A stretch of 64,000 nt of DNA from positions 2,108,001-2,172,000 of the forward strand of contig CATNEN010000007.1 of assembly GCA_950097015.1 (NCBI GenBank), in the 5' to 3' direction. Source of the DNA: Macrostomum hystrix. Taxonomy: Eukaryota; Animalia; Platyhelminthes. The translations under genes and the position numbers were made by a program. The notes under the pieces are model-generated. The model did no database searches, was not told the origin of the DNA, and worked only from the letters and a program-made list of their open reading frames with translations. This document shows, piece by piece, positions 9,841-60,048 of the stretch (positions within the stretch are counted from its first letter, which is position 1; every line of letters starts with the position of its first letter).

Positions 9841-10155
9841 TGTCGGAAATGCTTCCTCCAGAACTCCTTCTCGTCGTTTCCTTCGACTCTCCTCTTTTCT
9901 CTCTTGCTCACCAACTAGTTAATCAGTACGTTTCACTGCACTTTAATTGTTTCGCTTTCTATCGTCCTTTTAGCCCATAGACTACGCATCCTGCCCGCCC
10001 CTTGTTACTCAATCGTTGTCTATGTTTCTAATTCCTTTCTCGGTACAGTTCCCCTTTAGTTGCTTCTAGTGCGCACTAAGCCCACAAGAGCTTCGAACCA
10101 AATACTTTCAATATACAAGTCAAATACAAGCAAAGAAGTTTTGTCCCAAGCGACA
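9841..10155 (+). repeat. 3' LTR of the BEL/Pao element (315 bp)
   Basis: Starts TGTCG just after the integrase stop and ends CGACA, a 5-bp terminal inverted repeat. The satellite resumes immediately afterwards. Confidence 0.8.
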
Positions 10156-15887: not shown

Positions 15888-16316
15888 GCTTGGATTGTGT
15901 GCCGACTTTGCCTTGCTATGGCTTGGATACAACCGGAGTGTATTTGAGCTTAGGTCACTTGACAGACAGAGGAAATTCCAACTGTTATTTATGCTGAAAC
16001 TGACTGCTCATGAGCAATGACTCGAGAATCGCCGCCTGTTGGTTGCATCTCAGTCAAATTTGTTTTAATTGGCTCCTTGCGCTATAGTCATTACCTGTAG
16101 ATTCACGGAGATAGGGTAGAGAAAAATTTAACTTGTGCATTCTCATTGCAATAAACGGAGTGAAGAGCTGTTCGTGCAATCAACAAAAAGCTCCACATTT
16201 CAAGCGAAAAAGCTTGCGCACGAAGCTACGAGTATATATTTTTATGTGAAAGCGAAATTTATATTACATTACTTCGTTAATTTCAGCGCCGACACATCCA
16301 TACCCATTCAACATAT

Positions 16317-27627: not shown

Positions 27628-28883
27628 TCACAGTACAGCACATAAACACGAGCCTCTGAAACCAAACAGTTGATGATGCACAGATTTAATACGTAAGCAG
27701 AGCAAGGAAAGGTGTGACCGCAGCTCTTATGTACAAAAACTAGATCATGACTTGACATAACTAACACAGGCGACCCCTATAAGCCGTGAAGGCCATGATA
27801 CTCGTCAGCCGCTGCTTGTTTCCAGTTTCTCGCCTTATCGCCATGAATTCCTCCGAACCCTGCTTGAGGCCCAGGGCAGTCGTGATCTTGTCGACCGTTG
27901 AAAACTTGATGAACTCGTTGCCGCTGTTGTCAGGGAGGCTGTCAACTTCCACGAAATCACCAGACGCCTTCCTGTAGAACTAAGACCAAAGTGCTGCGGA
28001 AAGTTCACGCGATGTTACATGTTTCTGTGTGGTCTAAAGACTGCAGAATTCCTTAGACCGCTGCAAGAAGCATTTAAAATGCTATCTGAAATATTACAGC
28101 CGAATGTATCAGCGGCATGTATGAATTGGTGCACTGTTTCTGGTACAAAAGTGCATTTTCAGAAGATTCAGTGCAACATGAGGTTCAGATGATAAGGTTA
28201 GAATCAGCTCTCACATGACATGACAAATAGCACCGGATTGCAAAACAGACTCACATAGCATTTATAGAATAGTATCTACCCAACTGCAGGGGGTCGGTGG
28301 CAGAGCGGTTATCGCGTTTGCCTCTCGCACCACGGTCCCTAAGTTCGACTCCACGGCGAGGCCACATTTATTTGGAGCGCAGCCGCGGAGAGAAGGCTTG
28401 GGGGCTTGTGCAATTCGTGCAATTTACGCCCTTGAGGGCCAACCTCCAAGGCACAGTGAAATGTACACTGCCTGACGATGAGAAAGTCAGGGCAGATGTA
28501 CACACCTGTGTGAGCGTATGCCTGCGTACAGTATCTGAGTGCGTGTGCTCAGGAGTCAGCGAAATGGGCAGAATTGCCTCCTCGCTGGCTGCGGGTCTAG
28601 TGTCACTAAATGATGTGCCACTGCCCGCAGCCCTCCTGCAATTATTATTATTATTATTATCTACCCAACTGCAGTAAGTGGTGCTTCTCCTCTAGGCTGA
28701 GCTTGTCATAGTTGTTGTAGTCTGTGTAGACCTCGGGAAGCTGGCCGTCTCGCAGACAGAGCTCACGCAGCCCAGATAGTACATCATCCTGGCCACGCAG
28801 TTTTTCGGCACCGCAGTGTGCACTCCCGTCACTTCAGTGTGCAAATTTCTCGTCAGCTGGCGACCTACAGCAACCTGAGCCAT
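27628..28883 (-). pseudogene. Small CaaX-terminated protein family, copy 5 (disrupted)
   Basis: ATG at 28883; 1-nt frameshift near 28750; SINE inserted in exon 1; exon-1 remainder ends at donor 28255; exon 2 from 27971 lacks its 3' part; terminal exon 27655-27628 encodes GSCLCAVL*. Confidence 0.78.
28290..28657 (+). mobile_element. SINE family A, full length, inserted in coding exon 1 of copy 5
   Basis: A-box, B-box GTTCGACTCC, (ATT)n tail, and 17-bp TSD TATCTACCCAACTGCAG (28273-28289 / 28658-28674). Confidence 0.92.
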
Positions 28884-38993: not shown

Positions 38994-40410
38994 TCACCTC
39001 AAGGCCTGGGGATACACCACATTCTTCGTTCTTCCCCTTGGTGCGAAAATGAATAGGCCAGCTGGAGTTCCAACACGGGAGCAGGCGACATAAAGCTGCA
39101 ATGCGAGAAGCAAGGAGTCTCCAGGTTGATGCCAGCCACCTTCAGCGACTGTCCCTGAGCCTTGTTAATAGTCATCGCAAAGCACACTCTCACAGGGAAC
39201 TGCAGTCGCTTGAACTGAAATGGCAGGTCCGTGGGGATAATTGGAATCCGGGGAACGAATACAGACTCTCCTCTGCCAGATCCAGTCATTATCGTGGCCT
39301 CAATCACGTGTGGGAAGAGCCGCCTGACTATCAGTCTGGTGCCGTTACACAGCCTTGGCGCATTCAGGTTGCGGAGGAGCATAATTGGTGCCCCAACTTT
39401 CAGCTGCAAGTTGTGCGATGGAGTTCCAGGAGGATCTAGAGAGTTCAGAAACTCAACAGGATACTCCACAGCGGTGTCATCAGTCAACGTTGTATCAATT
39501 GACTTGTAGGTGAAAACTGCACCTGGCAACTCCTGAAGCAGTTGGTAGTTAATTTCGTTGGCGGCATCATTTCTAGGACACAGAATTGCCCTCTCTGACA
39601 GCCAGTCAACGTCAGCATATCGAACCATCAGGTTCGGGTAAACTTTTGCCTTGAGCTTTTTTGACGATTTTTGAGCAGTTTTTTGCACTTTTGAGCAGGA
39701 AGGAAATGATTTTTCGGGAATTTGAGTAGCCTATTGCACTCAGCGTAGGTGGTTTTAGGTATGTGCAAAGTTTGGTGCGATTTGGTTGAGCGGTTTCGGC
39801 GTCTATAAAGACAAAAGACAGACACTGGGACGCCACCGCACTCACCGCACTCAGTCTCAGTGCTGCTTGGGGGCCAGTAGACAGTCTAGGGGTTTGGGCT
39901 GTGTACATTCACGGCTTGAAATACAATGTACAGTCTGGGGCTTCGGCGCCCGGGGAAGGGAGGGGGGTGGCTGTAATAAAATTTGGCCCGCAGAGTGGCG
40001 GAGGGGAGTTGGGGTGGCTGTCCTCGGAAAACAAAAAGTGACTCACTTTGAGATGATGCAGCTTTGCTCTGGATTGAGTAGAGATGTTCAAAATTGACAG
40101 CATTGTTGGAAAACATGTAAAGTGTAAGTGGATCAAATTTGGAGAAAATCTGACAAAGTGGGGCGACGATATGTCGAATTGAGTGATTTTTTGACGATTT
40201 TTAAGCAGTTTTTTGCACTTTTGAGCAGGAAGGAAATGATTTTTCGGGAATTTGAGTAGCCTATTGCACTCAGCGTAGGTGGTTTTAGGTATGTGCAAAG
40301 TTTGGTGCGATTTGGTTGAGCGGTTTCGGCGTCTATAAAGACAAAAGGTTGCACACAGACAGACAGACAGACAGACAGAGTTTTCACTTTTATATATATA
40401 GATAGATAGA
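38994..40410 (-). mobile_element. Helitron remnant (5' end plus C-terminal PIF1-like helicase fragment)
   Basis: A|TCTATCTATC...(GTCT)n 5' end at 40410. Helicase motifs RAILCPRN, LKVGAPIMLLRNL, LCNGTRL, RLQFPVRVCFAMTINKAQGQSL, then after a 1-nt frameshift QLYVACSRV...TKNVVYPQAL*. The 3' end was not identified. Confidence 0.88.
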
Positions 40411-43660: not shown

Positions 43661-45328
43661 ATGTCTCGACTGAGTCAAGTGTTTCCAGACGACACGGAGC
43701 CATCTGAGCAGCAGGTCGCTCAAGCGACACTCGGCATCTTCGAGTTTGCGCGGATGCAGGCACCGAGAAGACAGCGATTTCTCTGGCTCACTGTGGCTGC
43801 TCTTGTGAACTTCTGCATGTACCTCAAAGGCCTGGTAACTTTGCCGCTGTTCTTGACATTGCCAGTGAATCTGAATGTGGAGACGACGCTTCTGCTGATC
43901 TCGACGATATTTTACCTGTACTGCGCTTTGTCGATCTTTGTCGATTCTTTCTACCTTGCGATGGGTAGCTTCGGCAAGATCACCAGCTTCCTGCGAGAGG
44001 CCGACACGCTAGTTGCGAGCAGCGCTGAGCGACCAGCTCTCGCGAGAGCACTGAGAGCTCGAATTGATCAGTTCCGACGAACGTTCAGACGCTTGCTTGT
44101 CATCTTCTCGTTTATTGCGACTGGAAACGGAGCGATGTGCGCCGTCCTAGTGCTGAACAATCCGAACGAGCCGACCTACAAGTTCTGCATTCGGATCAGC
44201 ACCTTGGACTCTGATCGCATGGCAAGTGGTGATCGCGATGTTCTGGATGTTTGAAACCTTTCTGTGGATCTTCGGCTTTTTCATATTCTACTCTTTCGGT
44301 CACCTTCTGATCAGCCTGCTGTCAGGATTCTGCTCCGGCTTGAGCAGTCAGCGAGTCTTCAGGTCTGAGCGGAGACTGCGCAGCCACATACCGTCTCTAC
44401 TACCTGAAGATCATCGAGATCGTGAACCGACTGGACTCCATGCTGCGACACTACATTGGAGTGACTTTAGTGTTCAGTATGGCGGCAGTGATGTTCATTT
44501 TGAATGATCTGCTGGACTTTACTTCAATGTCACTGTTGGCTGGTGATGATTGTCTGGTTTGTTTCGGGAATTGGTTTCCTATGTCTTGTTGCGTGCACCT
44601 GCGGACGAGTCTTTAAGCTGCTAAATTTTTCATATACCTCATTCCTATTATTTATTTTATGTTACGTGCTTTTTAGTAAACTGTTTTGTACTTGTGTACC
44701 TGCATATCGCCTTTTTAGGCCAAGAAGCCGCTGGAGGTGTTGCGTATCCAGGAAGTGACATCAAAAAATTTCAACGAGGTAGGAGCTGAATTGTCTTTTG
44801 AACACTAATACGAGTAGAAACTGTACCCATTAGCTTTGCTGTTTGCATCAGCATTACTACTACTATATTAATATTCATAACTAGTATTTAGTATGTGCTG
44901 CCCACATACCTTAATTAGATATTTTTACATAAGTGAGTATTTTTAATTTGGGACGAACGATAATGACTTTTACAAATCGTACACGACAAACTGCTTGAAT
45001 AGAAATGGTTGCGATTGCTTTCAGCTAATGGTTTTTCTTCACACAGTCTCAAACAATGAAAGCGGATTGACTTGCTCGAACTTCTTTGTAATAGACTATT
45101 CCTTGCTAGTTAGTGTGAGTTATCCTTTGTCTGCATTGTAAAAAATACAAATTTTAGTGCGCGAAACGTAACGAAGGCTGGTCACTTATGTTAACACTTG
45201 ATAACACTCACCCGTTTCAGCTTGCAAGTATGTTCATTACTTATTTCATCCAGATTGTCCGAACCCGGCAGTCACCTGCAACGAAGCATGCAACAGAGTT
45301 CTGCAACTGCAGCCGAGCCTTTTCGTGA
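43661..45328 (+). pseudogene. Gustatory receptor-like (7TMIC/GRL) gene A, pseudogene
   Basis: Exon 1 from 43661 has 50-nt and 5-nt deletions and a premature stop. Exons 44719-44778, 45025-45114 and 45221-45328 are intact (GLTCSNFFVIDYSLL; TYFIQIVR). Confidence 0.8.
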
Positions 45329-45527
45329 GTTTCGATGCCCTGCCAGAAAATGCTCGACGCAGGCATCAAAAAAAGTTTTTATTCCGATCTTTTGAACACC
45401 AATATGTGACGTTGTCACTTACTGCAAGAGCCCCTTTGAAGTTTAAATTTATGTGGTACTGAATTGGGCCGTTTAACAAATGTAATTACGCTGTCACCAA
45501 CTTTGCAATTCCGTATATTTCTTAGAT

Positions 45528-45932
45528 TGTTACTGTAAGTAAACGCCAACGCACATCGCGCTATCCCTAAACTTACCTCGCAGTTGCATTAATGTCAATT
45601 CTCTCAGCCAATGAGCGTGCGTGCTCTGGTTCTCTAGATTATCGATCGCCCTGTTTTTACCGCGGGCTAGCTTATTTAACTAGGCCCCCTGGGCCCGCCC
45701 GTGCCGCAACCGGCCCACCCCTTTTGTCACTGCTCTTGTCCCGGCCACTGTTACTTTCACTGCGACCTACTTACCCACTGTTCAGTGTTTCGTTCTGTCA
45801 TTTCCTGTCTACTGTCATCCGCTGTCTTCTCTATTGCATCGTCATTATTGAGCTCCTGCACCTGACTTTAATTATATTGCTTGTCGTGTGTGTCTCAGTG
45901 ATAATAAATAAAGATAAAGTGCTACTACTACA
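45528..45932 (+). repeat. Probable solo LTR (405 bp)
   Basis: TGT...ACA termini, AATAAA near the 3' end, and flanks TTAGAT / CTAGAT (6-bp TSD with one mismatch). Confidence 0.5.
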
Positions 45933-45989
45933 CTAGATTACGCGATCTCTGGACTCTAATTGGAATATTAAACTTCCGCCTGACTCTGT

Positions 45990-46210
45990 CTGGCGTTCAT
46001 TTCGTCACAAATATTTTCTCGCAATCGGTTTTTATGAGGTAAAAGCGTACGACGCTTTGTATCCTCGTATGAATTCATAGAGAAAGTGGCAGGCACTGTT
46101 CGGAATTTCGAAAGCTTAACAACCGAGGACAAGATGCTGTAAATAATGACACAGGAAAGCACGAAAAAATCAGAGACTGGTGGGCTTCATAGAAAAATGC
46201 TGTAAAAGAA
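45990..46210 (+). mobile_element. Possible degenerate LINE 3' end
   Basis: Translates in part as ...FESLTTEDKML*IM..., resembling L2/Crack-type ORF2 C-termini. Heavily decayed. Confidence 0.3.
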
Positions 46211-47369
46211 CTGAGGTTCAGTTTACATCTTGGTTTTAAACTCACCATAAAAAGATTTCGAGTTGTTTTATTTTAAGCTTAGTATTTTGCTAGATTTTTC
46301 GCACTTTTATATGTACGAGCGTAATTCTTTTACTTCTGTCGCCAATTATATGAGATTATCGATTTAACCATTTGCTTGTTTAACGTAAAATAAACGACAC
46401 AATCAGCACCCAAACCTACCTACTGCACATTCTAATGCAAAAATAGTTATTAATGCAAGCGCTGCATGTTCTGAATGTTTGACAGCGCTATAGAAAATCT
46501 GTCTAAGTTCAAAAGCTACAAAACCTTTATCTGATTACTTGATTAGAAGTTTTAGATTTTTCGAAAGTCGACGATCGTGAAGATTTTATGTTTGGTTTAT
46601 CTCTACATAATTTGTCTGTCTAATGATTATTTTTTCAACTGAGGATAGTCGACCTCATGAGCCTCTCAATGCTCTCATCAATTGTGAATTGTGGATGCCC
46701 GAGTTTGCGACACATTTATTGCACTTTTTACCTAATTTTAATCGTCAATGCTAGAAGTTAGGCACTAGGAGCGATTATGAGCGTCAAGCAAAGGTGGTGA
46801 ATTCAGTGTAAATGTGGTCACAAAAATCACCTGCAAACAGAAGTTTGGTGCTATATAAAGTTGCAACTCCAAAAACAAATATGTGCGGATGAGCAGATTG
46901 CTTTCAGAAAAGCAGCCTAGCTAAAAGCTGTGTTGGTAAAACGACAGTTGACAGTCACTGTGGACCAGTCAATTAGGATAATTGCTAAAGCTGCAGAGTT
47001 CTGCCAATTATCTATGCCTTCGCAAACATATGCAAACACATCTCTAGGCTCAGATTAGGATCCGATAAGTCATTCTGCAACCTACTGTATACGATGCCAT
47101 GGAAACGGATGTTGACTAAATGAAGGCCAAAGACTCGAACGAAGGCGATAATGGTGGACTGGGAAGAGTAGCGAAAAACTCAGTGAGCACATATGGAGTG
47201 ACAGAGATCAACTGCAAATCGAGAGACGGTTCTTTGTCTGGCAATAAATTTAAGAGACTAAAAAAGTAGTTAAAATAATAAATAGAAGATGTCTCGACAG
47301 GATGGTGAATTCGAGCCTTTAATTTCCAGTTACTGCCCAAGCTACTTTTAGCATCTTCGAGTTCCTCTG

Positions 47370-48529
47370 CCTGCAGGCACCGAACAAGCAGCGCTTATGG
47401 ATTTCTCTGGCTGCTCTGGTGAACTAGTGGTGGTGCCCTTGTTTCTTAAATTGCCAGTGAATTTAGGCGTGGAAACGACGCCCTTGATTTCTTTATATTA
47501 TTTTCTTTTGGCCTCCTACTTATCAACCTGCTGTCTGGGTTCTGCTCCGGCTTGAGCAGTGAAGTCAGCGAGTCTTCAGGTCTGAGCGGAGACTGCGCAG
47601 CCACATACCGTCTCTACTACCTGAAGATCATCGAGATCGTGAACCGATTGGACTCCATGCCGCGACACTACATTGGAGTGACTTTAGTGTTCATTATGAC
47701 GGCAGTGCAGATGTTCATTTTGAATGCACTGCTGGACTTTGCTTGAATGTCACTGTTGGCTGCGATGGTGATGATCTTCTGGTTTGTGTCGGGCATTGCT
47801 CTCTTGTGCTTCCTAGTATACATCTGCGGCCGCCTCAGCAACCTGGTCTGAATTTTCCTATTTGCATGAAACTTTATCCGAAGCTTAGCTTGAGAAAAGC
47901 TGACATGGGCAATCAGCTTTTTTGACACTTTGCATATCGGAAATACTATTCTGGTAATGTTGCGTTGGTAAAAATCATTTTAGACCAAGAAGCCTCTCGA
48001 AGTACTGCACATTCAGGATGTCAGTTCCAGCAATTTTAAGCAGGTGAGTTGGTGTTAGCTGACCATTTGAGCACGCATTCGAAATCCACCTTAAACTACG
48101 AGCCCTCAAACGATGTCAATGTGATATGATTTTGAGTAGGTTCAACAGCAGGCGTGATCAGTCATTCAAACAAATGCATGTTTTTTCATTTTAGCTGATG
48201 GTATTTCTTCACTCTGTTTCCAACAAACAAAGTGGACTGACCTGCTTCAGCTTGTTTGTTGTTGACTATTCGCTACTTATCAGTGTGAGTCCCTGGACAC
48301 TAATACTGGACACACTACAGGACACTGGACACACTACAGGACACTGGACACAACTGTAACGAGATAACCATTTACTACTCTGGTTTTCACACCACACGCA
48401 CCCGAACTGGATATATTTCAGCTGGCAGGCTCGTTTCTTACCTACTTTATCCTGATCATCCAGACCAGACAGACGACTTTACCAGACAGTATGTCATCTG
48501 CCTACAATTGCAGCCAGGTGCCTCAGTAG
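47370..48529 (+). pseudogene. GRL gene B, pseudogene
   Basis: Exon 1 is reduced to fragments by large deletions. Exons 47984-48043, 48195-48284 and 48422-48529 are intact (TYFILIIQT). Confidence 0.78.
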
Positions 48530-49726
48530 AATTCATGAAGTTCAGCACAATAACTACGTGGCATCCATTTTCAAAACTTTTCGCAGCATCAATGTGTCGC
48601 AAAAAAATAATAAAACACAGACCAGTTTTTTATGAGTGCCTTTCCTAAAATTGCATCCGAAACATTGTCTTTACGTCGTGTCATTGTGAGGCTCCACAGT
48701 TTTATGTAGATTTTTTTATGTCACGCGTATCGTATTAACGCAAATGATAATCTAGATACTTCCGCATAGAAGTACGCCTTTAAAATGTTTCTTATTTGAT
48801 AATAATCATTCTGTTACATGAGAGAGACATAATGGTTGATCCTCAGGCCAACATGGGAATGAAGAATGAAAGAATAAAAACGTGCTCGGTGAAATCTTAG
48901 ATATTCTGATAAATGTGCCTCTTAAAAGTTGAAGCACTATTCTTTGATTCATTGACTGCTAGCTTTTAGAATAGTTTGTTATTGGACGGCACCCGAGACT
49001 TTTGTCGTTTGCTTTGCCTTTAAGGATTTTAGAGCGTTTAATTGTAAGATATTGCTTATACTCGTAGTATAACAAAAGCCACTAAAGAGGAGATAGAACT
49101 GCCCTTTTAAGGCTATTGCTTTCGCAGACGACAAAAAACGAAAAAATTATAACAAAATATTATTAAAAAATAACTGGAGTCCTGTCTTGATGATTGAAAG
49201 CGGAACCTGATTTCTACTCTTAATAGGATGTAGCCATTCTGTGAAATTGGAATTGTCATAACAATGGCAGATAATTTTAGATTTGCACTTCAGTTTGCGG
49301 CACGCAAAAAACTTGTGAAGTGAAGCACGGCAGAACTTCTCACCTGAGTGGCTCTTCATTCATTTCCATAATTTCCATTACTCCGAACAGTCAATCAGGA
49401 CGACTGAGGTAGTATGCTAAATACACAGCAACCGCGATAATGAACTCAACTGTGCTTTGGTCAAAACCATTATTACGAGGTTATGTTTGCACTGAAAGTT
49501 CTATGGATTCAACTGTCACAGACAGTCACCATGGATTCCATACAATCAAGCATTAAATTCTGGAAGCTCTCTGAAGTAAAACTGCGAATAAAAGGGGATT
49601 GCACTTGACATCTCTCACACATAGTGAATTCTAACTGAGCTCAGTGACAACCTAACATTACAGAACCACAGAATACATCGGGTGCAGCCTCCACTTCAGT
49701 TCCGCTGCCAGTTTGAGTTTGTCAGC

Positions 49727-52154
49727 ATGTCGCAACTGAATCAGGTCTCTCCAGGAGACACGGAGCCATCTGAGCTGCAGGTCGGTTCTGCTCAAGCGAC
49801 CCTAAGCATCTTCGAGTTCGTGTGGCTGCAGGTACCCAGCAAGCAGCGATTCCTTTGGCTCGCTGTGGCAGCTCTTGTGAATTTTTGCATCTACCTGGAG
49901 GGTCTGGTAATCTTGCCGCTGTTCCTGACAATACCCATTAATTTGAATGCCGATTCGACTCTTATGATCTTGTCATCGCTGTTTTATCTCTACTGCGGCT
50001 TCATTTATTCGGTCTACCTGTTGCTGGGTAGCTCCGGCAAGATCACCAGCTTCCTGCGAGAGGTCGACACGCTTGTTGCGAGCAGCGCTGAGCGACCAGC
50101 TCTCGCGAGAGCACTGAGAGCTCGACTTGATCAGTTCCGACGAACGTTCAGACGCTTGCTTGTCATCGTCTCGTTGATTGCGACTGGAAACGGAGCGATG
50201 TGCGCCATTTTAGTGATTACCAATCCAGATGATCCACCCTATAAGTTCAGTGTCCGAATCGCCACCATGGGAACCTGGAGTCGTACTGAGCCTCTGCCAT
50301 CGCTTACATCGGCACCTTGGACTCTGATCGCCTGGCAGGTGTTTATTGCTGTCTCTTGGGCGTTCGAAACATTCCTGTGGGCTTTCGGCTTCTTTATATT
50401 CTTTGCTTTCGTTCTTCTAATGACTTATGTGCTGTCAGGATTCTGCTCCGGCTTGAGCAGTGAAGTCAGCGAGTCTTCAGGTCTGAGTGGAGACAGTGCA
50501 GCCGCATACCGTCTCTACTACCTGAAGATCATCGAGATCGTGAACCGACTGGACTCCATGCTGCGACACTACGTGGGAGTTACTTTGATGTTCATTTTGG
50601 CAGCTGTCATGTTCATTTTGAATGCGCTGCTCGACTTCAAATCGATGTCATTGCTGTCAGCTCTTGTGCAAGTTTTCTTGTTTGTGTCCGGCATCGTTCT
50701 TCTGTGTTTACTTGTATATATTTCAGGACGCATCTACAACCAGGTTTGCAGACCGGACAATTGTATTAAGCAAATTTCCTTTGATTATATTTTGCTCCAG
50801 TTATTTCACTGCGTATTTTTCAGGCAAAGGAGCCACTTGAGATCCTCCATAGGCAGGAAATTACACATAAAAATTTCAACGAGGTATGACATATCGAGAT
50901 AAAAGCGCGCTTGCTTGACTGATGCATATTTGCAGCAAAGCTACTTTAGTAGAAGGGGTGGGTTTCAATTATTCTTTAGAAAGCTCAAGATATTTATTTA
51001 TTACTACGCGTTGTTTTCAGTAATATAATCATCGTATTACTGCAGTAGCATGTATAATATTATTTTTAACCACTGTCTTAATCTCATCAATGGGGTACAG
51101 TTTTTACGCGGGCGGTTGACCTCAAGCAGTCAATCCACCAGTAGTCTTAGGGGTCGGTGACAGTGGTTATCACGTTTGTCTCTCGCACCACGGTCCCTAA
51201 GTTCGATTCCACGGCGAGGCCACATTTATTTGAGGCGCAGCCGCGGTGAGAAGGCTCGAGGGCTTGTCATGCAATTCGCGTCCTTGAGGGTCAATATCCA
51301 AGGCACAGTGAAGTGTACACTGCGTGACGATGAAAAAGGGCAGATGTACACACCTGTGTGAGCGTGTGCCTGCGTATATTATCTGTGTGCGTGTGTGCTC
51401 AGGAGTCAGCGAAATGGGCGAAATACCCTCCTCGCTGGCATCGGGTCTTGTGTCACCAAATGATGTGCCATTGGACGCAGCCCTCCTGCAAATTTTATTA
51501 TTATTATTTTTACTATTAACCAGTAGTCGTTGATCTTTTCTAGAATAGATCAATGCATGCATTTTAAGTCTTACTGGCTGGCCATTGGCTGTTATTGATC
51601 AAATTAAATTCCAGAATACGCTTATAAAGAGTATAGTAAAGTTAAACTTTAAGTGTTAGAGCTTTTAGGTTTGGGTAGCGCGTTCAAAGGCTTTAAACTT
51701 TTTACAAAGTAGTATAAAGTGAATTTACTGCTTTCTGAACTACAGTCGGGTGCTTCTCAAGTGTAGCAGCCTAAAGCGCCATTCTTATGCGACGCAAGTC
51801 GATGTCTAGTGAATGGAAGTAGCGCATTGTATTCTATGTCGGAAAGTAAAATATTACGTTTTAATTCTTCAGCCCAATGTCTTTCAGATGGTGATATTCC
51901 TTCACGCCGTTGCTAACAATGAGAGTGGCATTACCTGTGCGAATTTCTTTACCATAGACTATTCTCTGCTCGTCAGCGTAAGTGTTCTCATCTTGCTGAT
52001 CCAAGTAAGGGTGAACAACTTAAAACAGCACTTTTCCAATGCTAACTTTCAGCTGGCCAGCCTATTCATGACCTACTTCATCCTGATTGTCCAGACCAGG
52101 CAGACTGCATCAGCAGAGGGCACGCCTGCTGCGTGCAATTGCAGCAGGACGTGA
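49727..52154 (+). CDS. GRL gene C (intact, 422 aa)
   Basis: Exons 49727-50743, 50824-50883, 51888-51977 and 52053-52154, with three phase-0 introns. Multiple hydrophobic segments; GITCANFFTIDYSLL followed by TYFILIVQ, the GR-superfamily TM7 signature. Confidence 0.85.
51147..51518 (+). mobile_element. SINE family A, full length, in GRL-C intron 2
   Basis: B-box GTTCGATTCC, AT-rich tail, and 10-bp TSD ACCAGTAGTC (51137-51146 / 51519-51528). Confidence 0.88.
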
Positions 52155-52985
52155 TCGACCGCATCGCGAGTTAAGTCGACACAACCGGGACTTAAATAGC
52201 AACTAAACGCTGTGTACTCTTTTCTAATCTTCTTTTCTAATCTTTGCGGGCCCTATTCTTGTTTTTCGTGAATTCATTAGTTTTTTACAGAAGGATAGTT
52301 GGAATTCATAATAATTGGAAACTCATGATCTGTTGGAAGCTGCCAGTCTCAGGCTAATTTTAGTAAACCTGAAGTGTGACCGATCAGATCACAGAAGTTT
52401 AAGTCTTTGTCCCAATTGCGATAAAATGGATAAGAAATTGAATTATTTTTGCCAACAAACAGTGGGTTTCCTATCCGTTTGTTACGTTTCCTTTTACTGT
52501 TGATTCGCAGTTGATTTGTTCGCACTGTTTTTGTAGAAGCTTTTAATGAACAATATCTCGTCTACCTGTCGTATTTTCTGTATTGCATTATTATCATGGC
52601 ACCAGCAGCCCAAATTCGATTCCAATTAGCATCCCAATTCAATTTAGTCAGTCTGGCCGGTGATGAGTTCTCATCGAAACCATCTCGATAAAACGTGAAT
52701 GCAACGCTTAACATACACATCCAGCAGCAGTCATGGCAGCGAATAGATGGTAGCAGGAACTCCAATGTGGCGTGAGCTGTTTGCTTAGCAAATTACTGCT
52801 CACATATTGGTTGGGACGGCAAATTGCCAGAGATGGAAGCTGTTTACAGACTGAGTGAAGGGTTGAGCTACTGCGATAAAAAACGGGAGTATTGTTGAAA
52901 TAAAAGCTACACGAGCAGCGGCTGATCAAACTGCGCACTGAAACACTGTCGAGAAAGAGCGTGCGAACAGCGTTTGCTGGTTAAC

Positions 52986-54526
52986 ATGGCGCGAACTCGA
53001 ATTGAAGCCAGTTCGCAACGCCAGGGTGACGAAGCTCCAACTGCACCTGGCGTATCGTTGGAGAAAATTCTGGGCACCTTCTTCAGGCAGGCCAGCAACT
53101 TTGGCGTGCTGCCTGGCATGCAAAAACCTGGCATGAGGCGTGTCATTATGTTAGCTCTCACAGTGATAGTTAATCTTCTCATCTACGCAGAGGCAATATG
53201 CACCGCAGTAATGTTTCTGCGTCTGCCAATCAAATTGAATGCCGACACTACTTCGCTAATCGTATCAATCTTTTTTCATTTCTACTGCGCGTCTATCTAC
53301 TCTAATTTTATATGGCTCAGCTGCTCTGGCAAGCTCACGAGTTTCGTGCGCGATGTGGACACAATCTGGACCGCCTCCAGAGCTTGGCCGCCGCTCGAGG
53401 CTGCCCTGCTGAAATACTTTACACAGTACAAGCAGCTCCTTCGCAAACTTTGTGTCGTATTTTTGATCTGCTCAACGCTAAATTCTAGTTTGAGTGTAGC
53501 GCTGATCTTGATGGCGCAGAACCAAGCACCGTTCAAGTTTAACGTCCGCTTGGTCATGCTGGGAGCGTCTGGAACGGACCCACTTCCGCCCATCAGCCGG
53601 GCTCCGTGGAGTCAGGTCGTTGGTCAGGTCGTTGCTGCTGCTTGGTGGATCTTCAAATCGCTCACCTGGAACTTCGGGTTTCTATTGTTCTTTTCTCTTA
53701 CATTTATCATATTCTATCTACAAAAAAGTTTTAACTCTGGCCTGGCCGGGCAGATACGAGAGTCGGATGGACTCCACGCCAGCACAGCTGCAGCCTTCCG
53801 TTTGTTCTATTTAAAAACTGCGGCTGCTGTTGAAAATGTGGATTGCATTGTACGATTGTACGTAGGCGCCACATTTTTGTTTAGTTTGGTGGCCATTATG
53901 TTTAACATCAACGCGCTGCTGGACATGACCAGTTTGGACTGGCTGGTCATCTTCATCCTGCTTCTATGGATATCTTCTAGCTTCGTGCTTCTTGGCCTGC
54001 CGGTGGTCATTTCCGGGCGTGTTCTTAGTCAGGTAAGACTATTTAAAGACTTTTCCTGCGCAATGTCTAATCCTTTCCAGAAAAGGGTATTTGACATGCA
54101 TTTCTCTGTAGGCCAAGAAGCCCTTGGAGGTACTACAGAGTCAGGAGGTCACGCAGAAGAACTTTAACGAAGTAAGAGCTGGCTGATGCGTTCTCAATTG
54201 CGCCATTCAAACAATAGATTTTTTCGTTAATAACGATCCTATCCGTGCGATTTCAGCTAGTTGTATTTCTACAGACGGTAGACAGTAACAGTAGCGGGAT
54301 TACCTGTGCGGGCTTGTTCGTCATGGACTACTCACTTATTCCAAGTGTATGTCACTCTGAAATAATCGGCGCTCATATTTCCATTGTCTTAAAATAATCC
54401 AGATTCACAATTTTCTTTCAGCTGGCCGGGTTGCTGTTGTCCTACTTTATTCTCATTGTGCAGACGCGATCAAGTACTGATACTGGGTGCGCCGTCGACA
54501 GCGGGAGAAACAGCACTCAAACTTGA
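52986..54526 (+). CDS. GRL gene D (intact, 433 aa)
   Basis: Exons 52986-54032, 54112-54171, 54257-54346 and 54422-54526, all phase 0. GITCAGLFVMDYSLI; SYFILIVQ. Confidence 0.85.
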
Positions 54527-55257
54527 CCTGTACGAGCGATTACATTAAACTTTGTGTCAAAAAAAATAATAAATAAAACTCGAAGAAACGTATTTCTTAT
54601 TATTGATCATGTATAACTCCAGCAGTTATAGTTATCTGTGATCACAAAAATTATCTGAGTATATCTGGTTCTACTCCATTTTGCATACTTTGAAAATAAA
54701 TTAAGCAATTTAAGGCCACAAAACAACTACGGCGTTTATTAAGATGTACAATTTTTCTAATGGTTAAACAGTCATGCTTTAAAAGAAATGCGACGCTATT
54801 GAGCAGGTCAAAATATTGAAAATGGCTTTTTCAGTCGATTCAAACCTTCAACCCGTAGCGTTGCCACGAAATCGCACCCGTTCAGACGGGGCGCAATGCT
54901 TACTCACCTTGACTCGCTAATGGTGACATTCCACTCCACGTAGCGGAATGATCCCTGAACCCCGAGCATTAATGGTTGTCAGAATGTGATCCTGGACCGC
55001 ATCCTGGTTGTGTAGTGCGAGTACGTGTAGGATTACGTTTGCTTTATTTTTTATTCTGATATTCAAGATGTCAATTAGCAAACTGCTAGTCCATTATCCG
55101 GACCACTTGTGCGACGGCTTCCGTATCTTAAAATCCCACAATTAAGCCAGCATTTCATGATCACGGCTGTCACGTGTGAGCCTCGCATCTACCAGTATTA
55201 AAGCAGGCAGGCCCAAAAGCGAGAGGATCTTATCGAATTCCAGCAGCCTCCTAAGCC

Positions 55258-56671
55258 ATGGATGGGCCATGCACAGTGCAGGAAACGTTTTCTATCGCCA
55301 TTAAGCTGCTCAGCTACACTGGGTTGCTGCCTGGTCTGCAGCGTCCGGGACCGAGGCGCGCCTTGTGCTTCATAGCTGCCATCGCCTTCAATCTGTGCCT
55401 CTACCTGGAGGGGTTTGCCCTGATTCCGTTGTTCTTGAAGTTCCCAGCCAGCCTCAGCACGGACACTGTCCTGCTGGTGACGACTGCAGTTTTACATCTC
55501 TACTGCGCTTTCGTAAACTCTTTGTTCATTCAAATAAGCTACTCGAACGAGCTCTGCACTTTCCTGCACGCTGCGGACTCAGTGGTGGCGGCCGCAGATG
55601 CGCTGAATCCGTTAGCCGATGCCATGGTGACTCGCCTGGCCCGATTCCGGTGCCAGTTCTGGTTGCTCTTTGCCGCGTTCTCGTTCGGCACAGTCGGAAA
55701 CGGCTGCATGTGTGCCGCGCTGCACCTTGTGGCGCAGAATCAGCCGCCGTTCTCCTACGGAGTTCGGGTACGGCAGTTCGAATCAGTGCGACGAGCTGAG
55801 CCCCTGCCAACAATTAGCGAAGCGCCATGGTTGCAGGTGTTCTGCCTGGTAGCGGCAAGTATCGAATGGATTTATGAATCCTTCATCTGGTATCCGGCCT
55901 GTTTATTGTTCTTCTCCTCGCTGCTAATACTCATTCACCTACTGTCAGCTTTCAACTCTGGCCTGGCTACACAGATATGCCCTGATCCTAACGTGTCAGT
56001 TGAGATGGTGGCCGCCTACCGACTGTTCTACTTGAAGCTCATCGAGCTACTGAAGACCGCAGATGCTTCGCCTCTACGTTGGCGCAACGTTTCTGTTCTG
56101 CCTACTGGCAATCATGCTCATAACTAACGCTCTGCTGGATGTTGAAAAGCTGTCCACCCTGATCACAGTGATCTTGCTGTTCTGGGTCTTCGCAAGTTCT
56201 ATGCTGCTCTGCATGCCTGTTTTGGGCACTGGCACTATTCTAAATCTGGTGAGTTCATGTGGCCGTTAAATGTCTCTTGTTTATTTCCACATAATCTAAA
56301 GGCGCGTGAGAACACTGCTAGGGCAACCCGACTTCTGTCTTGGGTCCTTTTGTCCTAAAAGTCGCCATGACTGAATCAAGAAAACATAATAAAGTACGAG
56401 TATATATATTACGATTGCTTGTGCGAGGGTGTATTTAGTTGCATTATGTCCCATTGCATTACAGACAAAGAAGCCTCTAGACATTCTGCACAAGCAGCAA
56501 GTTAACGATAAGAACTTCGCCGAGGTAATTTTGTTTTGGGCAGCCCGCGCAAGGCGAGCTCAATATTTTGACCTACGATAAGTGACCTACTTTGTGCTGC
56601 TGGTGCAAACTCAGCAGGGCCCATCGCTGTCGTGCCAGTGCGACAGAAACTGCAGCTGGCGGTCTGCCTGA
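55258..56671 (+). pseudogene. GRL gene E, probable pseudogene
   Basis: Frameshift at ~56062 in exon 1 (donor at 56248); exon 2 at 56465-56524; exon 3 absent; exon-4 remnant TYFVLLVQT...RNCSWRSA*. Confidence 0.78.
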
Positions 56672-57102: not shown

Positions 57103-60048
57103 TCATGGCTTCCATGTGATGACCCTGATAGCAATGGCGGCGTGTTTGCGCACGTTGGTGATGATGTCAGACTCGAGTTTTCGAATCTTGTCGACGTGCC
57201 CGGTGAGTATTTTGCGACCCTCGGGCGCCTCAGCCAGACAGGTGAAAACTTTGAGGGCGTTGACGCGGACTTCGCTGTTGGGATCGTCCACCAGCGGCAG
57301 CAGCGGGTTGATGCACTCGGCGTTCAGAGCGGTGTACTTGCCCTGTGTTGTCACTGTGATGCTGGATGAGTAGAGAGGAATGAAATCGCTAGTCGGGTAC
57401 ATAGGCTATTAATTGAAACTATAATTCCCTTTTGAATAGCTTTGAAAGCAACAAACAATGAGCAGTACTCACAAAGACAGCGCGCCGGCAGCGTTGGACC
57501 TCACCTCGCTGGCATTGTCACCCAGCAGGCTGATCAGAGCTGGCACGGTGCCCACTTCCACAGCCTTGTCTTTTCCGTCAAGTGGCACGCTGTGTTCAAA
57601 TGTTAGTTTATTGTCTGATGTTCGGTGACAGGCAAACAGAATTAGGAATAATTAAAACAAGATATCAGGATCTCTGCCTCCTCATTCGTGATAATGGGCT
57701 TTGTAACTTCAGCAAAAACTATTTTAAAAGTTACAACATGCAAGTGTATGTAACAAGAGACAGCACGTTAAGCCTGATGTGTTGTATCGTATTTCACTTT
57801 GATGTCTCACTAAGTGGACTCGTTCCAAAAATTTATGAGTCTGTTCAGGTAAATTAGCATAGGAATTACGCACCTGAGATCCATAATATCCCTGGCGGCC
57901 TTCGCCCGGATTGTGGGCAAGTTACTGGCCAGTAGCGAGGTGAAGACTTCCATTCCATGAGCTTTCAGAGCGTCCTGCGTGTTCACAACCAGACAGAAGT
58001 GCAGCGTATCCAGAATGCACTCTTTGATTTCATCGTGCTCCGATTTGACCTTCTCGATGAGCTTGGGCACCAAGGCAGCCTGAACGATGCCATCGGCGCC
58101 GAATGGCACCTCAGAGAGCATCTCGATGGCCATGTGGGCGTTGCGCCGGCAGATGTCTTCGGCGTCATCGAACAGAGCCGACAGAGGGGCGATGCTGCCG
58201 GTGTCCAGAATGGCCTCGCGTCCCACTGAGTGCTCTAGGAGGTTGGTAAGGAAGCAATGTTATTAAAGCTATATGAAGTGATTACTCCCGAAACTTTTTT
58301 TGTAAAACTCGTAAGCCTAAAAACTAAAAATGACCTCATCAAATCAGGCATTTACATCCATCATTGAAATCAGTTAAGCTTAACTCTTCAGATAAGCTCC
58401 CAAACCATATTGTACTTTTTGACCATGATTAAACACTGAGGCCTGGACCCAGTGCTAAAAATGTTATTTGACTGTGTGGTTTCATTTCAATGTGATGTTT
58501 GGACTCGCTCACGAGAAATCACGTAGATGCACATGGTAGAAAGCTGGCGGCAAGTGACATCGGAATCCCTCAGCAGAGACTTCAGAGATACGACAATTCC
58601 TGCAAGGCAACGAGCCGAATAATTAATCTGCAACTATTGCTGCTTGCGAGCATAAATGAACGAGAAAAACAGTAGATGAGGCCAGCAGACTGACCTTCGT
58701 GAATAGCTGCGGCAACGTGCTCATGATCGTGCAGGTAGTCGCACAGAGCCTTCACGGCCTTCTGACGCGTCAGTGTGTTGTCAGTGTCCTGCAGCTCTCG
58801 GTTCTGATGTAAAAAAGTCAATCGATTTTCCTCCATTATGAATCTCAACAGTTTTCTTAGGGAACTAAAATATCAAGTGACGCTTTGCTCAATCGTATTT
58901 GAACATTAGACCGGCTTAACATTTTACCCCCAATAAAATGATCACAAAAGCAGTGAATATATGCTAGCGCTTGAGGTGGAAAGCAGCTGGTCCCGCTAAA
59001 AAATAGGGATGTTTCTTTGGGTGATTCCAGTTGGAATCTGCGGTGTTTCCAGAAAAAGAAACAGCCGAACGCTGCAAACATACCAATCGGATGATTCCAT
59101 GCTTAGAATCTACCCAACTGGGCGTTTTCTCGGTGCTTCTTGGTGGCGAAATGGAATCACCCAAATAATCCTCCAGTTCGGAAGATTCCATGCTCAGAAA
59201 CCGCCGAGGAATCGCCCGTAAATAATTATCTGGTTGTCCCATGGGCCACTGGTTCGGGTGATTCTTCGGCGGTTTCCGCACAATTTACGGTTACATCGGC
59301 TGCTTCCTGGGTGGTTTCTTTAACTCTTGCGAGATAGGGGGGATTTTGGTAGATTCCACTCCTATTTTGCACAAAAAAACCCGCCGAAGAAGCAGCCGAA
59401 TTTTTTACAGGGGTAGCTTTTTGTTGCTCGCGACAGCGGACAACAAAAAATGAATTGCTTAAATAGCACGTATTCGCACATTAAAATTCATTAATTTTCT
59501 GTTTTACTAAAACTAGAATAATGCGAGACTGATTTCGAGACGTTTATCGCTATATAAATCGCTTTTCAAATATATTATACCACAACTGTTTTACTGCGAA
59601 AACATTTAATTATTACTAATACTTATACTAAGGCATGACTAATACTAGTGGTTAGAGCGTCGGACACACGACTTAAAGGTCGGTGGTTCGATTCGCGACT
59701 TCACTTAGCCAGACACTTAAATCAGTATTGCTTCAGTTCACCCAGCTGTTAAATGGGTACCAGCATAAGCTGGGGTAATTGAAGGTGGGTGTGGCGTCCC
59801 GCCAGTTTATGGACAGAACAGCTGTACCCAGCCTAAAGATGCGCCTCGCGATTGCTGCGGCTGTGCTGTTGGTTGCACATCTGACCCAATAGGGGCAGGT
59901 ATTTAAATATTAAATAATACTAAAACAATATACATGAATAAATAGAAAGTCTTACCAATCGTCTCAAAGCCCCATTGCCATAGGCCATTGTGGCCTTGGT
60001 CGGATCGATATTCGGTGGTAAATTGGATGAGATCACAGACGTGGCCAT
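57103..60048 (-). CDS. RSPH14: Radial spoke head protein 14 (RTDR1), armadillo-repeat protein
   Basis: Exons 60048-59956 (MATSVISSNLPPNIDPTKATMAYG), 58803-58695, 58599-58513, 58234-57874, 57589-57473 and 57361-57103, all phase-consistent. Motifs TRQKA, HSVGR, RAKAARD, SNAAGAL, TTQGKY, LAEAPEGRK, and C-terminal WKP*. Confidence 0.92.
58992..59412. mobile_element. MITE with CCC..TAAAAAA termini (CACTA/EnSpm-like) in RSPH14 intron 1
   Basis: Left end CCCGCTAAAAAA, right end TTTTTTTACAGGG, 2-bp TSD GT, and internal GGAATC/GATTCC repeats in both orientations. Confidence 0.6.
59633..59905 (+). mobile_element. tRNA-derived SINE family C
   Basis: A-box TAGTGGTTAGAGCG, B-box GGTTCGATTCG, and central CACCCAGCTGTTAAATGGGTACC resembling conserved domains of widespread invertebrate SINEs. 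Confidence 0.65.

What the first reader, a model, noticed from the sequence alone, without database searches (positions are those of the whole stretch)
43661..56671. Tandem cluster of five gustatory-receptor-like (7TMIC) genes in an apparently non-arthropod genome
Seen: five same-strand paralogs, each with a long first exon followed by 60-nt, 90-nt and terminal exons separated by phase-0 introns (GRL-E has lost the 90-nt exon), with GITC..(F/L)F.(I/M)DYSL and (T/S)YF(I/V)L(I/L)VQ motifs; two intact and three disrupted. Established: the insect GR/OR superfamily is defined by the TM7 TY.....Q(F) motif and ancestral C-terminal phase-0 introns, and forms ligand-gated ion channels; non-arthropod GRLs are usually few and poorly studied. 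Inference: a lineage-specific chemoreceptor expansion undergoing birth-and-death.
Basis: partly seen in the sequence, partly recalled or inferred. Interest (0 to 1): 0.78.

Follow-up and report, generated by a model that had tools for sequence, protein, structure and literature searches.

The report
Flatworm gustatory-receptor-like gene cluster
This stretch of a Macrostomum flatworm genome holds five side-by-side copies (two intact, three broken) of a gene related to insect taste-receptor ion channels; it is a real but ordinary small member set of a family already known to occur widely in animals.

Summary
Window 43661-56671 (+) carries five collinear paralogs, A to E. Each has a long first exon, then 60-nt, 90-nt and terminal exons joined by phase-0 GT..AG introns. 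C (422 aa) and D (433 aa) are intact. A, B and E are pseudogenes, broken by multi-base deletions, an in-frame stop, a lost donor site and a lost 90-nt exon.

The GR-like (7TMIC) reading is supported by independent tests:
- Language-model neighbours of exon 1 of C and of D are 7tm_7, Trehalose_recp, DUF3537 and DUF267 clusters.
- For an AlphaFold model of exon 1, the eight best of 48,161 PDB chains are all insect GRs or ORs (Z 14.9-11.7, 212-265 residues aligned).
- The only close relatives among 1.84 billion proteins are Macrostomum lignano proteins. Their spliced 180-aa form shows the same exon junctions and passes Pfam 7tm_7 (46.8 bits, cut-off 26.6).

Charge bias and a conserved C-terminal N-glycosylation site fit an N-in/C-out topology. 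The TM7 motif reads TYhhhhhQT: three of four positions are kept, and the outer-gate Phe is Thr.

"Expansion undergoing birth-and-death" is only partly right. The copies are old (dS 0.7 to saturated), constrained (dN/dS about 0.2) and locally homogenised. The subfamily has six loci genome-wide. A chemosensory role is inferred, not shown.

This is a new member of a known kind. The scan's notes hold no earlier GRL finding in this genome.

The parts
43661..45328 (+). GRL-A, pseudogene. Exon 1 is 43661-44614, readable only in four frame pieces; exon 2 is 44719-44778; exon 3 is 45025-45114; exon 4 is 45221-45328.
   Evidence: It has 50-nt, 5-nt and 5-nt deletions relative to C. The exon-1 donor GT is lost. 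The TM7 motif is degraded to TYFIQIVR.
47332..48529 (+). GRL-B, pseudogene. Exon-1 remnants are 47332-47424 and 47480-47845; exon 2 is 47984-48043; exon 3 is 48195-48284; exon 4 is 48422-48529.
   Evidence: Residues about 100-218 of exon 1 are missing or scrambled. There is an in-frame TGA near 47741-47746. The 3' exons and their splice sites are still recognisable.
49727..52154 (+). GRL-C, intact, 422 aa. Exon 1 is 49727-50743 (339 aa, TM1-TM6); exon 2 is 50824-50883; exon 3 is 51888-51977; exon 4 is 52053-52154 (TM7 motif TYFILIVQT, then an NCS sequon).
   Evidence: The frame is open in all four exons. All introns are phase 0 with GT..AG.
51150..51520 (.). SINE-like repeat of about 370 bp inserted in intron 2 of GRL-C. 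It makes that intron 1004 nt, against 85-246 nt in the other copies.
   Evidence: About 88% identical copies lie on many contigs; 3742 first-look candidates genome-wide.
52986..54526 (+). GRL-D, intact, 433 aa. Exon 1 is 52986-54032 (349 aa); exon 2 is 54112-54171; exon 3 is 54257-54346; exon 4 is 54422-54526 (SYFILIVQT, then an NST sequon).
   Evidence: Exon 1 is 39% identical to that of C. All splice sites are canonical.
55258..56671 (+). GRL-E, pseudogene. Exon 1 is 55258-56058 plus 56063-56248 after a frameshift; exon 2 is 56465-56524; the 90-nt exon is absent; the terminal-exon remnant is 56582-56671.
   Evidence: A deletion removes exon 3 and the first codons of exon 4. No usable acceptor is left: a stop lies directly upstream of VTYFVLLVQT.

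Best explanation
The region is a tandem array of five gustatory-receptor-like (GRL; 7TMIC superfamily, Pfam 7tm_7) genes in a Macrostomum flatworm. Other agents' notes say M. hystrix. I showed only that M. lignano proteins are the closest relatives.

C and D are intact and most likely encode subunits of tetrameric, ligand-gated cation channels of the insect GR/OR type. In this reading:
- exon 1 encodes helices S0-S6, which form the per-subunit ligand pocket and the cytoplasmic anchor helices;
- the 60-nt and 90-nt exons encode the S6-S7 loop, S7a and the first half of S7b;
- the last exon encodes the pore-lining end of S7b and a short, glycosylated, Cys-containing extracellular tail.

The pore motif is TYhhhhhQT. 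It keeps the Thr/Ser hydroxyl ring, the lipid-contacting Tyr, the inner hydrophobic gate (Leu at the BmGr9 I440 position) and the gating Gln. The outer hydrophobic plug (Phe/Leu/Met) is replaced by Thr, in every copy and in the M. lignano ortholog.

A, B and E are dead copies. The array is old, evolved under purifying selection, and shows exon tracts of near-identity among A, B and C that look like gene conversion.

What is shown: gene structures, paralogy, lesions, fold, family membership via the ortholog, and constraint.
What is inferred: channel function, tetramer formation, a sensory (chemosensory) role, and gene conversion.
For: Paralogy and gene structure.

Fold:
- The AF2 model of C exon 1 has pLDDT 69.2 and pTM 0.61.
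- Foldseek's top PDB hits are AgamOR28, ApOR5-Orco, MhOR5, Gr64a, Orco and BmGr9, with TM about 0.45-0.56. Unrelated hits have TM below 0.25.
- In an all-against-48,161-chain VIA-align search, ranks 1-8 are all insect GRs or ORs (Gr64a Z 14.9, 262 residues aligned, rmsd 3.9). The list then drops to partial helical bundles of 81-142 aligned residues.

Sequence:
- ESM Atlas neighbours of exon 1 of C and of D score 0.94 to 7tm_7 clusters, and also hit Trehalose_recp, DUF3537 and DUF267.
- An exon-1 profile searched against 1.84e9 proteins finds only M. lignano A0A1I8J111 (7e-30) and one distant Logan protein.
- Its cluster mate A0A1I8J294, which UniRef names 'Gustatory receptor', is a spliced 180-aa fragment about 70% identical to C with identical exon junctions.
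- That fragment scores 46.8 bits on 7tm_7 (cut-off 26.6), covering model positions 218-369 of 370, and 35.1 bits on Trehalose_recp (cut-off 21).
- Its best PDB sequence hit is a gustatory receptor, with TYFVLIIQT aligned to TYLVILIQF.
- It maps back only to this cluster in the genome.

Topology:
- There are six hydrophobic spans in exon 1 and one across the exon 3/4 junction.
- K+R is about 18 in the predicted inside loops against about 6 outside.
- An N-x-S/T sequon lies at the C-terminal tail of all five copies and of the M. lignano ortholog.

Constraint: dN/dS is 0.19-0.23 for five of the six pairs; it could not be computed for C-D, where synonymous sites are saturated.

Family criteria and gate roles come from PMC7746228, PMC5203786, PMC9998090 and PMC11100771.
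Against: - No exon of the window on its own hits Pfam 7tm_7 at E<=1.
- The genome-wide 7tm_7 scan did not flag this cluster.
- The exon-1 profile finds no PDB sequence and no arthropod GR. Sequence-level membership therefore rests on the spliced M. lignano ortholog rather than on the window's own joined model, which I did not search.
- The AF2 model is of moderate confidence, was built from nine related rows, and lacks TM7.
- The last motif position is Thr, outside the (F/L/M) consensus.
- There is no expression, localisation, ligand or current data.
- Non-arthropod GRLs with known roles include non-chemosensory ones.
Confidence: 0.85

Rival explanations
1. These are genuine GRL channels, but not external chemoreceptors. 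C and D would serve another role, as some non-arthropod GRLs do: developmental patterning (Nematostella Grl1), light or peroxide sensing (C. elegans LITE-1 and GUR-3), or internal metabolite sensing.
For: - The subfamily is tiny: two intact genes here plus one fragment on another contig.
- It is old and under steady purifying selection, with dN/dS about 0.2. It does not show the fast, large expansions typical of environmental chemoreceptor repertoires.
- The intracellular loops are the most conserved parts.
- Known non-chemosensory GRL roles are cited in PMC7746228 and PMC5533540.
Against: - Tandem duplication with repeated pseudogenisation is the usual pattern for chemoreceptor loci.
- Most characterised family members are chemoreceptors.
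- Nothing here points to a specific alternative role.
Confidence: 0.35
2. The whole array is decaying. C and D are intact only by chance or are no longer expressed, so the locus has no present function.
For: - Three of the five copies are dead.
- A SINE sits in intron 2 of C.
- No window exon reaches Pfam significance by itself.
- No expression data were available.
Against: - C and D keep open frames of 422 and 433 codons across four exons, with all six splice-site pairs canonical.
- dN/dS is about 0.2.
- Motif residues that are degraded in pseudogene A are kept in C and D.
- The C-type ortholog is retained in M. lignano at about 70% identity.
Confidence: 0.08
3. The family is not 7TMIC at all. 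It would be a GPCR-like or unrelated lineage-specific multi-pass membrane family whose C-terminal motif resembles GRs by chance.
For: - There are no direct Pfam hits on the window's exons.
- The exon-1 profile does not reach arthropod GRs.
- VIA-align notes that helical models can reach Z about 13-14 by chance arrangement.
Against: - The eight best structural matches of 48,161 are all GRs or ORs, covering 212-265 residues. No other hit covers more than 142, and GPCR entries align only 102-116 residues.
- Foldseek agrees.
- Exon 1, which lacks the motif, gives 7tm_7 neighbours on its own for two paralogs that are 39% identical.
- The spliced ortholog passes two curated Pfam cut-offs.
- Intron phases and positions, charge bias and the C-terminal glycosylation site all fit GRs.
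Confidence: 0.02

Closest known systems
Insect gustatory receptors (Pfam 7tm_7 / Trehalose_recp; e.g. BmGr9, DmGr43a, DmGr64a)
   Same: - Protomer fold over S0-S6 (Z 11.7-14.9).
- Length of 422-433 aa.
- Indicators of N-in/C-out topology.
- Three phase-0 introns at the 3' end, the last within TM7.
- T/S, Y, inner hydrophobic gate residue and Q of the S7b motif.
- The spliced ortholog passes both Pfam models.
   Different: - The last motif residue is Thr instead of Phe. That residue is the outer hydrophobic plug, F444 in BmGr9 (PMC11100771).
- Sequence identity is about 8-13% in the structural alignments.
- Single exons are not recognised by the Pfam model.
- The host is a flatworm, and the family has only a few genes.
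Non-arthropod GR-like (GRL) genes (Trichoplax, Nematostella, Capitella, Lottia, sea urchin, C. elegans gur/lite/egl-47)
   Same: - Small, divergent families outside arthropods.
- A recognisable TM7 motif and conserved phase-0 3' introns.
- Function mostly unknown (PMC7746228, PMC5850775, PMC5203786).
   Different: - I found no paper describing flatworm GRLs.
- One planarian study reported no LITE-1 or Gr28b homolog in Schmidtea (PMC5533540).
- The only prior trace is the automatic UniRef name 'Gustatory receptor' on an M. lignano fragment.
Macrostomum lignano A0A1I8J294 / A0A1I8J111 (UniRef fragments)
   Same: - Ortholog of the A/B/C lineage, about 70% identical to C over 171 aligned residues.
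- Identical exon junctions, a TYFVLIIQT motif and an NCS tail.
   Different: - Only 132-aa and 180-aa fragments are on record, and one is misnamed 'PRA1 family protein'.
- No M. lignano counterparts of D or E were found in the representative library.

Membership tests
GR/GRL (7TMIC superfamily, Pfam 7tm_7 PF08395) | Score above the curated 7tm_7 cut-off | tested here: met
   Met by proxy. The spliced M. lignano ortholog P0003 is about 70% identical to C and has the same junctions. It scores 46.8 bits (cut-off 26.6) over model positions 218-369 of 370, and 35.1 bits on Trehalose_recp (cut-off 21). The window's exons searched one by one give no hit.
GR/GRL (7TMIC superfamily, Pfam 7tm_7 PF08395) | TM7 motif (T/S)Yhhhhh(Q/K/E)(F/L/M): first three conserved positions | tested here: met
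   C has TYFILIVQ, D SYFILIVQ, B TYFILIIQ and E TYFVLLVQ. M. lignano has TYFVLIIQ. Only pseudogene A deviates, with TYFIQIVR. The motif definition is from PMC7746228.
GR/GRL (7TMIC superfamily, Pfam 7tm_7 PF08395) | TM7 motif: last position F/L/M (outer gate) | tested here: not met
   It is Thr in all five copies and in the M. lignano ortholog. The literature calls the motif 'diagnostic, but not definitive' and notes that many members diverge (PMC7746228).
GR/GRL (7TMIC superfamily, Pfam 7tm_7 PF08395) | [quoted passage not shown] | tested here: met
   All three introns are phase 0. Two lie in the TM6-TM7 loop region and the last lies six codons before TY, inside the hydrophobic TM7 span. The criterion is from PMC5203786 and PMC9998090. 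Exact column-by-column homology to arthropod intron positions was not aligned, because no reference gene structures were at hand.
GR/GRL (7TMIC superfamily, Pfam 7tm_7 PF08395) | Seven TM helices with an intracellular N-terminus and extracellular C-terminus | tested here: met
   - Kyte-Doolittle analysis finds six spans in exon 1 plus one across exons 3 and 4.
- K+R is about 18 inside against about 6 outside.
- An N-x-S/T sequon is conserved in the C-terminal tail of all copies.
- The structural superposition on GR/OR protomers agrees.
DeepTMHMM was not available.
GR/GRL (7TMIC superfamily, Pfam 7tm_7 PF08395) | GR/OR protomer fold | tested here: met
   The exon-1 model (S0-S6) has GRs or ORs as all of VIA-align ranks 1-8 of 48,161 chains, with Z 14.9-11.7. 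Foldseek's top hits are ORs and GRs with TM about 0.5. TM7 is not in the model.
GR/GRL (7TMIC superfamily, Pfam 7tm_7 PF08395) | Length of about 350-500 aa | tested here: met
   C is 422 aa and D is 433 aa, from summed exon lengths.
GR/GRL (7TMIC superfamily, Pfam 7tm_7 PF08395) | Forms a tetrameric ligand-gated cation channel | not testable with these tools
   This needs expression and electrophysiology or cryo-EM. A multimer prediction of the full-length spliced protein was not possible by reference.
Chemoreceptor (functional class) | Expression in sensory neurons and a response to external chemicals | not testable with these tools
Class-A GPCR | GPCR fold with N-out/C-in topology | tested here: not met
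   GPCR entries align only 102-116 residues at Z 7.5-9.3, far below the GR/OR matches. Charge bias and the C-terminal glycosylation site point to N-in/C-out.

The most novel reading that the evidence does not exclude
This would be the first documented GRL/7TMIC locus in Platyhelminthes. The family would be retained in the early-branching Macrostomorpha while planarians and parasitic flatworms lack it. It would also be a conserved pore variant (TYhhhhhQT) in which the outer hydrophobic plug of insect GRs is replaced by a hydroxyl residue, implying a channel gated only by the inner Leu ring and the Gln swing. That could mean higher basal conductance or different ion selectivity.
Probability: 0.3. 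Interest if true: 0.5.

Novelty: new member of a known kind. Interest (0 to 1): 0.33.

Why it matters
GR-like channels are known across animals, but almost nothing is known about them outside arthropods and nematodes. I found no paper that treats them in flatworms.

Two intact genes in a small, tractable locus offer a clean entry point. Macrostomum is a genus with transgenesis and RNAi, so one can ask what a spiralian GRL does and where it is expressed.

The conserved Phe-to-Thr change at the outer gate is a natural experiment on the gating model drawn from the BmGr9 and Gr43a structures.

For the scan itself, the result is mainly a confirmation.

Tried and rejected
Searches that came back empty or uninformative:
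- Pfam on single exons and on read-through ORFs of the window gave no 7tm_7 hit.
- The word-indexed protein search with C exon 1 gave nothing and was saturated at 8000 candidates, so it is uninformative.
- My first coordinates were off by one base and were corrected.
- The exon-1 profile against PDB sequences gave nothing.
- ARAGORN and the repeat finder found nothing in the cluster or in C intron 2. Rfam (gathering thresholds) matched nothing anywhere in the window.

The genome-wide 7tm_7 scan:
- It missed this cluster.
- Two of its four hits (C38 and C39) turned out to be class-A GPCRs.
- The C11 hit is a real, separate GRL.

Other leads:
- P0002 (Logan, 322 aa) is only a distant relative, 22% identical to D. 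It has no Pfam hit and no counterpart in this genome.
- The C37 paralog shows only the middle part of the protein in the fetched 3.6 kb. No TM7 exon was found there, and I did not pursue it.

Literature:
- Robertson 2015 and Saina et al. 2015 are not held.
- Searches for flatworm GRLs found nothing relevant.

Readings rejected:
- GPCR topology or an unrelated fold.
- Assembly-error frameshifts: the lesions are 5-50 nt deletions and missing exons.
- A recent burst of duplication: dS is 0.7 or more and the introns cannot be aligned.

Left out on instruction: the joined (spliced) protein models of C and D were not searched, folded or typed anywhere. All searches were made exon by exon by reference, with the database protein P0003 serving as the spliced proxy.
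Full report
**What is there**

ORF listing and direct reading of the window show five collinear, same-strand copies of one gene between 43661 and 56671. I took the four exons of the best copy (C) as queries against the window in six frames. This located every exon of every copy in the same order (my first exon-3 and exon-4 coordinates were off by two and by one base and were corrected).

Gene C is intact:
- exon 1, 49727-50743 (339 codons)
- exon 2, 50824-50883 (60 nt)
- exon 3, 51888-51977 (90 nt)
- exon 4, 52053-52154 (33 codons plus stop)

Gene D is intact:
- exon 1, 52986-54032
- exon 2, 54112-54171
- exon 3, 54257-54346
- exon 4, 54422-54526

All introns are phase 0 with GT..AG.

The other three copies are broken:
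- Copy A has 50-nt, 5-nt and 5-nt deletions in exon 1, has lost the exon-1 donor, and has two substitutions in the TM7 motif.
- Copy B lacks or has scrambled about 450 nt of exon 1 and carries an in-frame TGA.
- Copy E has a frameshift near 56059-56062 and a deletion that removed the 90-nt exon and the head of the last exon. A stop now lies directly before the motif.

These lesions are too large to be sequencing miscalls.

**Whose genome**

- The assembly has 220 Mb in 42 contigs, and the window is C7:2108001-2172000.
- The window also holds BEL/Pao, Penelope-type GIY-YIG and Helitron-type Pif1 fragments, so it is animal DNA.
- An exhaustive HMMER search of 1.84 billion representative proteins with an exon-1 profile found only two proteins.
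- The strong one (7e-30) and its cluster mate are Macrostomum lignano UniRef entries.
- The 180-aa mate is about 70% identical to C, 68% to A, 64% to B, and 44-49% to D and E. It maps back only to this cluster.
- Earlier notes of this scan name the species as M. hystrix. I did not test the species, only the genus-level affinity.

'Non-arthropod' is thus right.

**Is it a GR-like 7TMIC?**

Direct Pfam scans of the window's exons are blank, and a genome-wide 7tm_7 scan does not flag the locus. Four other lines of evidence agree with the GR-like reading.

1. Even so, its nearest language-model neighbours are 7tm_7 clusters at 0.94, followed by Trehalose_recp, plant DUF3537 and nematode DUF267 clusters, all branches of the same superfamily. 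This holds for C and for D, which are 39% identical.
2. An AlphaFold model of C exon 1 has pLDDT 69.2 and pTM 0.61.
 - Foldseek's best PDB matches are AgamOR28, ApOR5-Orco, MhOR5, Gr64a, Orco and BmGr9, with TM about 0.45-0.56. Unrelated rows have TM below 0.25.
 - In a Foldseek-independent comparison with 48,161 chains, ranks 1-8 are all insect GRs or ORs. Z runs from 14.9 to 11.7, with 212-265 residues aligned and rmsd 3.8-4.7.
 - The list then falls to partial helical bundles of 81-142 residues. GPCR entries align only 102-116 residues.
3. The spliced M. lignano ortholog shows exactly the predicted junctions between exons 1 and 2, 2 and 3, and 3 and 4.
 - It passes both curated Pfam models: 7tm_7 at 46.8 bits (cut-off 26.6), ending at model position 369 of 370, and Trehalose_recp at 35.1 bits (cut-off 21).
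 - Its best PDB sequence hit is a gustatory receptor, with the two TM7 motifs aligned.
4. The published criteria for GR/GRL membership are topology, three phase-0 3' introns with the last in TM7, the 7tm_7 signature and the TM7 motif (PMC5203786, PMC7746228, PMC9998090). They are met except for one motif position.
 - Hydropathy gives six spans in exon 1 and a seventh across the exon 3/4 junction.
 - K+R is about 18 in the predicted cytoplasmic segments against about 6 outside.
 - Every copy and the M. lignano protein keep an N-x-S/T sequon in the C-terminal tail, which fits a luminal or extracellular C-terminus.

**The pore motif**

The consensus is (T/S)Yhhhhh(Q/K/E)(F/L/M) (PMC7746228). The copies read as follows:

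| Copy | Motif |
|---|---|
| C | TYFILIVQT |
| D | SYFILIVQT |
| B | TYFILIIQT |
| E | TYFVLLVQT |
| M. lignano ortholog | TYFVLIIQT |

In BmGr9 the residues have these roles (PMC11100771):
- T forms a hydroxyl ring.
- Y contacts pore lipids.
- The middle hydrophobic residue (I440) is an inner gate.
- Q swings into the open pore.
- The final F is the outer hydrophobic plug.

In the flatworm copies everything is kept (Leu at the inner gate) except the plug, which is Thr throughout. This is the one defining feature that was tested and not met. The literature treats the motif as diagnostic but not definitive, so the Thr does not remove the genes from the family. It does suggest altered gating.

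**Evolutionary reading**

Nei-Gojobori estimates:

| Pair | dS | dN/dS |
|---|---|---|
| C-A | 0.70 | 0.23 |
| C-B | 0.95 | 0.19 |
| A-B | 0.79 | 0.20 |
| C-D | saturated (not computable) | not computable |
| C-E | 2.8 | 0.20 |
| D-E | 2.5 | 0.22 |

- Introns do not align between copies.
- The split between the A/B/C lineage and D and E predates the divergence from M. lignano.
- Within exon 1, identity is mosaic. C and A are 97-98% identical over about 150 nt in the first intracellular loop. A, B and C are 93-100% identical over about 140 nt in the second intracellular loop. Elsewhere identity is 60-80%.
- Because synonymous sites are also identical in these tracts, local gene conversion is the likeliest cause. 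That is an inference.
- Profile and protein searches of the whole genome find only these five copies plus a 25%-identical fragment on C37.
- A separate GRL lineage sits on C11, where a 165-aa ORF scores 27.4 bits on 7tm_7.

The picture is a small, old, constrained array that is losing members, not a current expansion.

**Mechanism proposed**

C and D encode subunits of a tetrameric ligand-gated cation channel of the GR type.
- The ligand pocket lies in the outer half of the S1-S6 bundle.
- The long S4-S6 helices and S7a form the cytoplasmic anchor.
- S7b lines the pore.

I put family membership at about 0.93, a channel function at about 0.75, and an external chemosensory role at about 0.5. The main rival is a non-chemosensory GRL role.

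**Limits**

- On instruction, I did not search, fold or type the joined spliced models of C and D. Searches were made exon by exon by reference, and the database protein P0003 served as the spliced proxy. As a result TM7 is missing from the structural model.
- Robertson 2015 and Saina et al. 2015 were not readable. Whether they list flatworms among the lineages surveyed is from memory uncertain.
- My searches of the held literature found no description of flatworm GRLs. One planarian paper reports no LITE-1 or Gr28b homolog in Schmidtea (PMC5533540).

**Verdict**

The family assignment is supported, and the 'expansion' reading is corrected. The genes are a new member set of a known kind, already auto-named 'Gustatory receptor' for an M. 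lignano fragment. Interest is modest. It rests mainly on the phylum, the conserved Thr at the outer gate, and the experimental tractability of Macrostomum.

Noticed in passing
window 51150-51520 (intron 2 of GRL-C): A SINE-like repeat of about 370 bp with a tRNA-like head. Copies about 88% identical lie on many contigs, and the first look found 3742 candidates genome-wide. It inflates this intron to 1004 nt, against 85-246 nt in the paralogs. Related copies are visible near window 28257-28457 and in locus L011.
   Followed up: partly
window 50030-50180 and 50430-50570 (C), with the matching parts of A (about 43970-44120 and 44290-44430) and B (about 47530-47670): Tracts of 93-100% nucleotide identity among A, B and C inside exon 1, against 60-80% elsewhere. 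Synonymous sites are identical too. This looks like gene conversion between an intact gene and its pseudogene neighbours.
   Followed up: partly
G000:C11:6215517-6215816 (-), locus L011 1501-1995 and 2340-3194: A separate, more divergent GRL gene. Its 165-aa ORF passes Pfam 7tm_7 (27.4 bits, cut-off 26.6). An upstream 285-aa ORF looks like the N-terminal half. A SINE is nearby. No TM7 exon was found in the fetched stretch.
   Followed up: partly
G000:C37:2961208-2961798 (-), loci L008 and L019: The only other member of this subfamily in the genome, about 25% identical over residues 75-270 of C. It either has a different exon structure or is a fragment. No TM7 exon was found within 1.5 kb downstream.
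   Followed up: partly
window 51978-52052: Intron 3 of GRL-C is 75 nt, in frame and free of stops, so ORF 51813-52154 reads through it. If retained, it would insert 25 residues into TM7.
   Followed up: no
window 4923-9823 (+): Two long overlapping ORFs of a BEL/Pao-type LTR retrotransposon, carrying Peptidase_A17, RVT_1, Integrase_H2C2 and DUF5641. Observed only.
   Followed up: no
window 10056-11118 (both strands) and 16001-18000: A low-complexity repeat that translates as GLTT-type repeats (Pfam GLTT, 224 bits). Strand composition is very strongly skewed nearby, with GC skew down to -0.59.
   Followed up: no
window 26204-26956 (+) and 38999-39688 (-): Fragments of a GIY-YIG (Penelope-like) element and of a Pif1-type (Helitron-like) helicase upstream of the cluster.
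   Followed up: no
window 57103-57402 (-): An exon of an armadillo/HEAT-repeat gene (weak Pfam HEAT and Arm_2 hits, below the curated cut-offs) lies immediately downstream of GRL-E on the opposite strand. A radial-spoke RSPH14 identity is my guess and was not tested. It marks the 3' boundary of the array.
   Followed up: no
P0001 (UniRef A0A1I8J111, M. lignano): This 132-aa fragment of the GRL ortholog is named 'PRA1 family protein' in UniRef. The name appears to be a mis-annotation: the protein scores 23.9 bits on 7tm_7, and its cluster mate is named 'Gustatory receptor'.
   Followed up: partly
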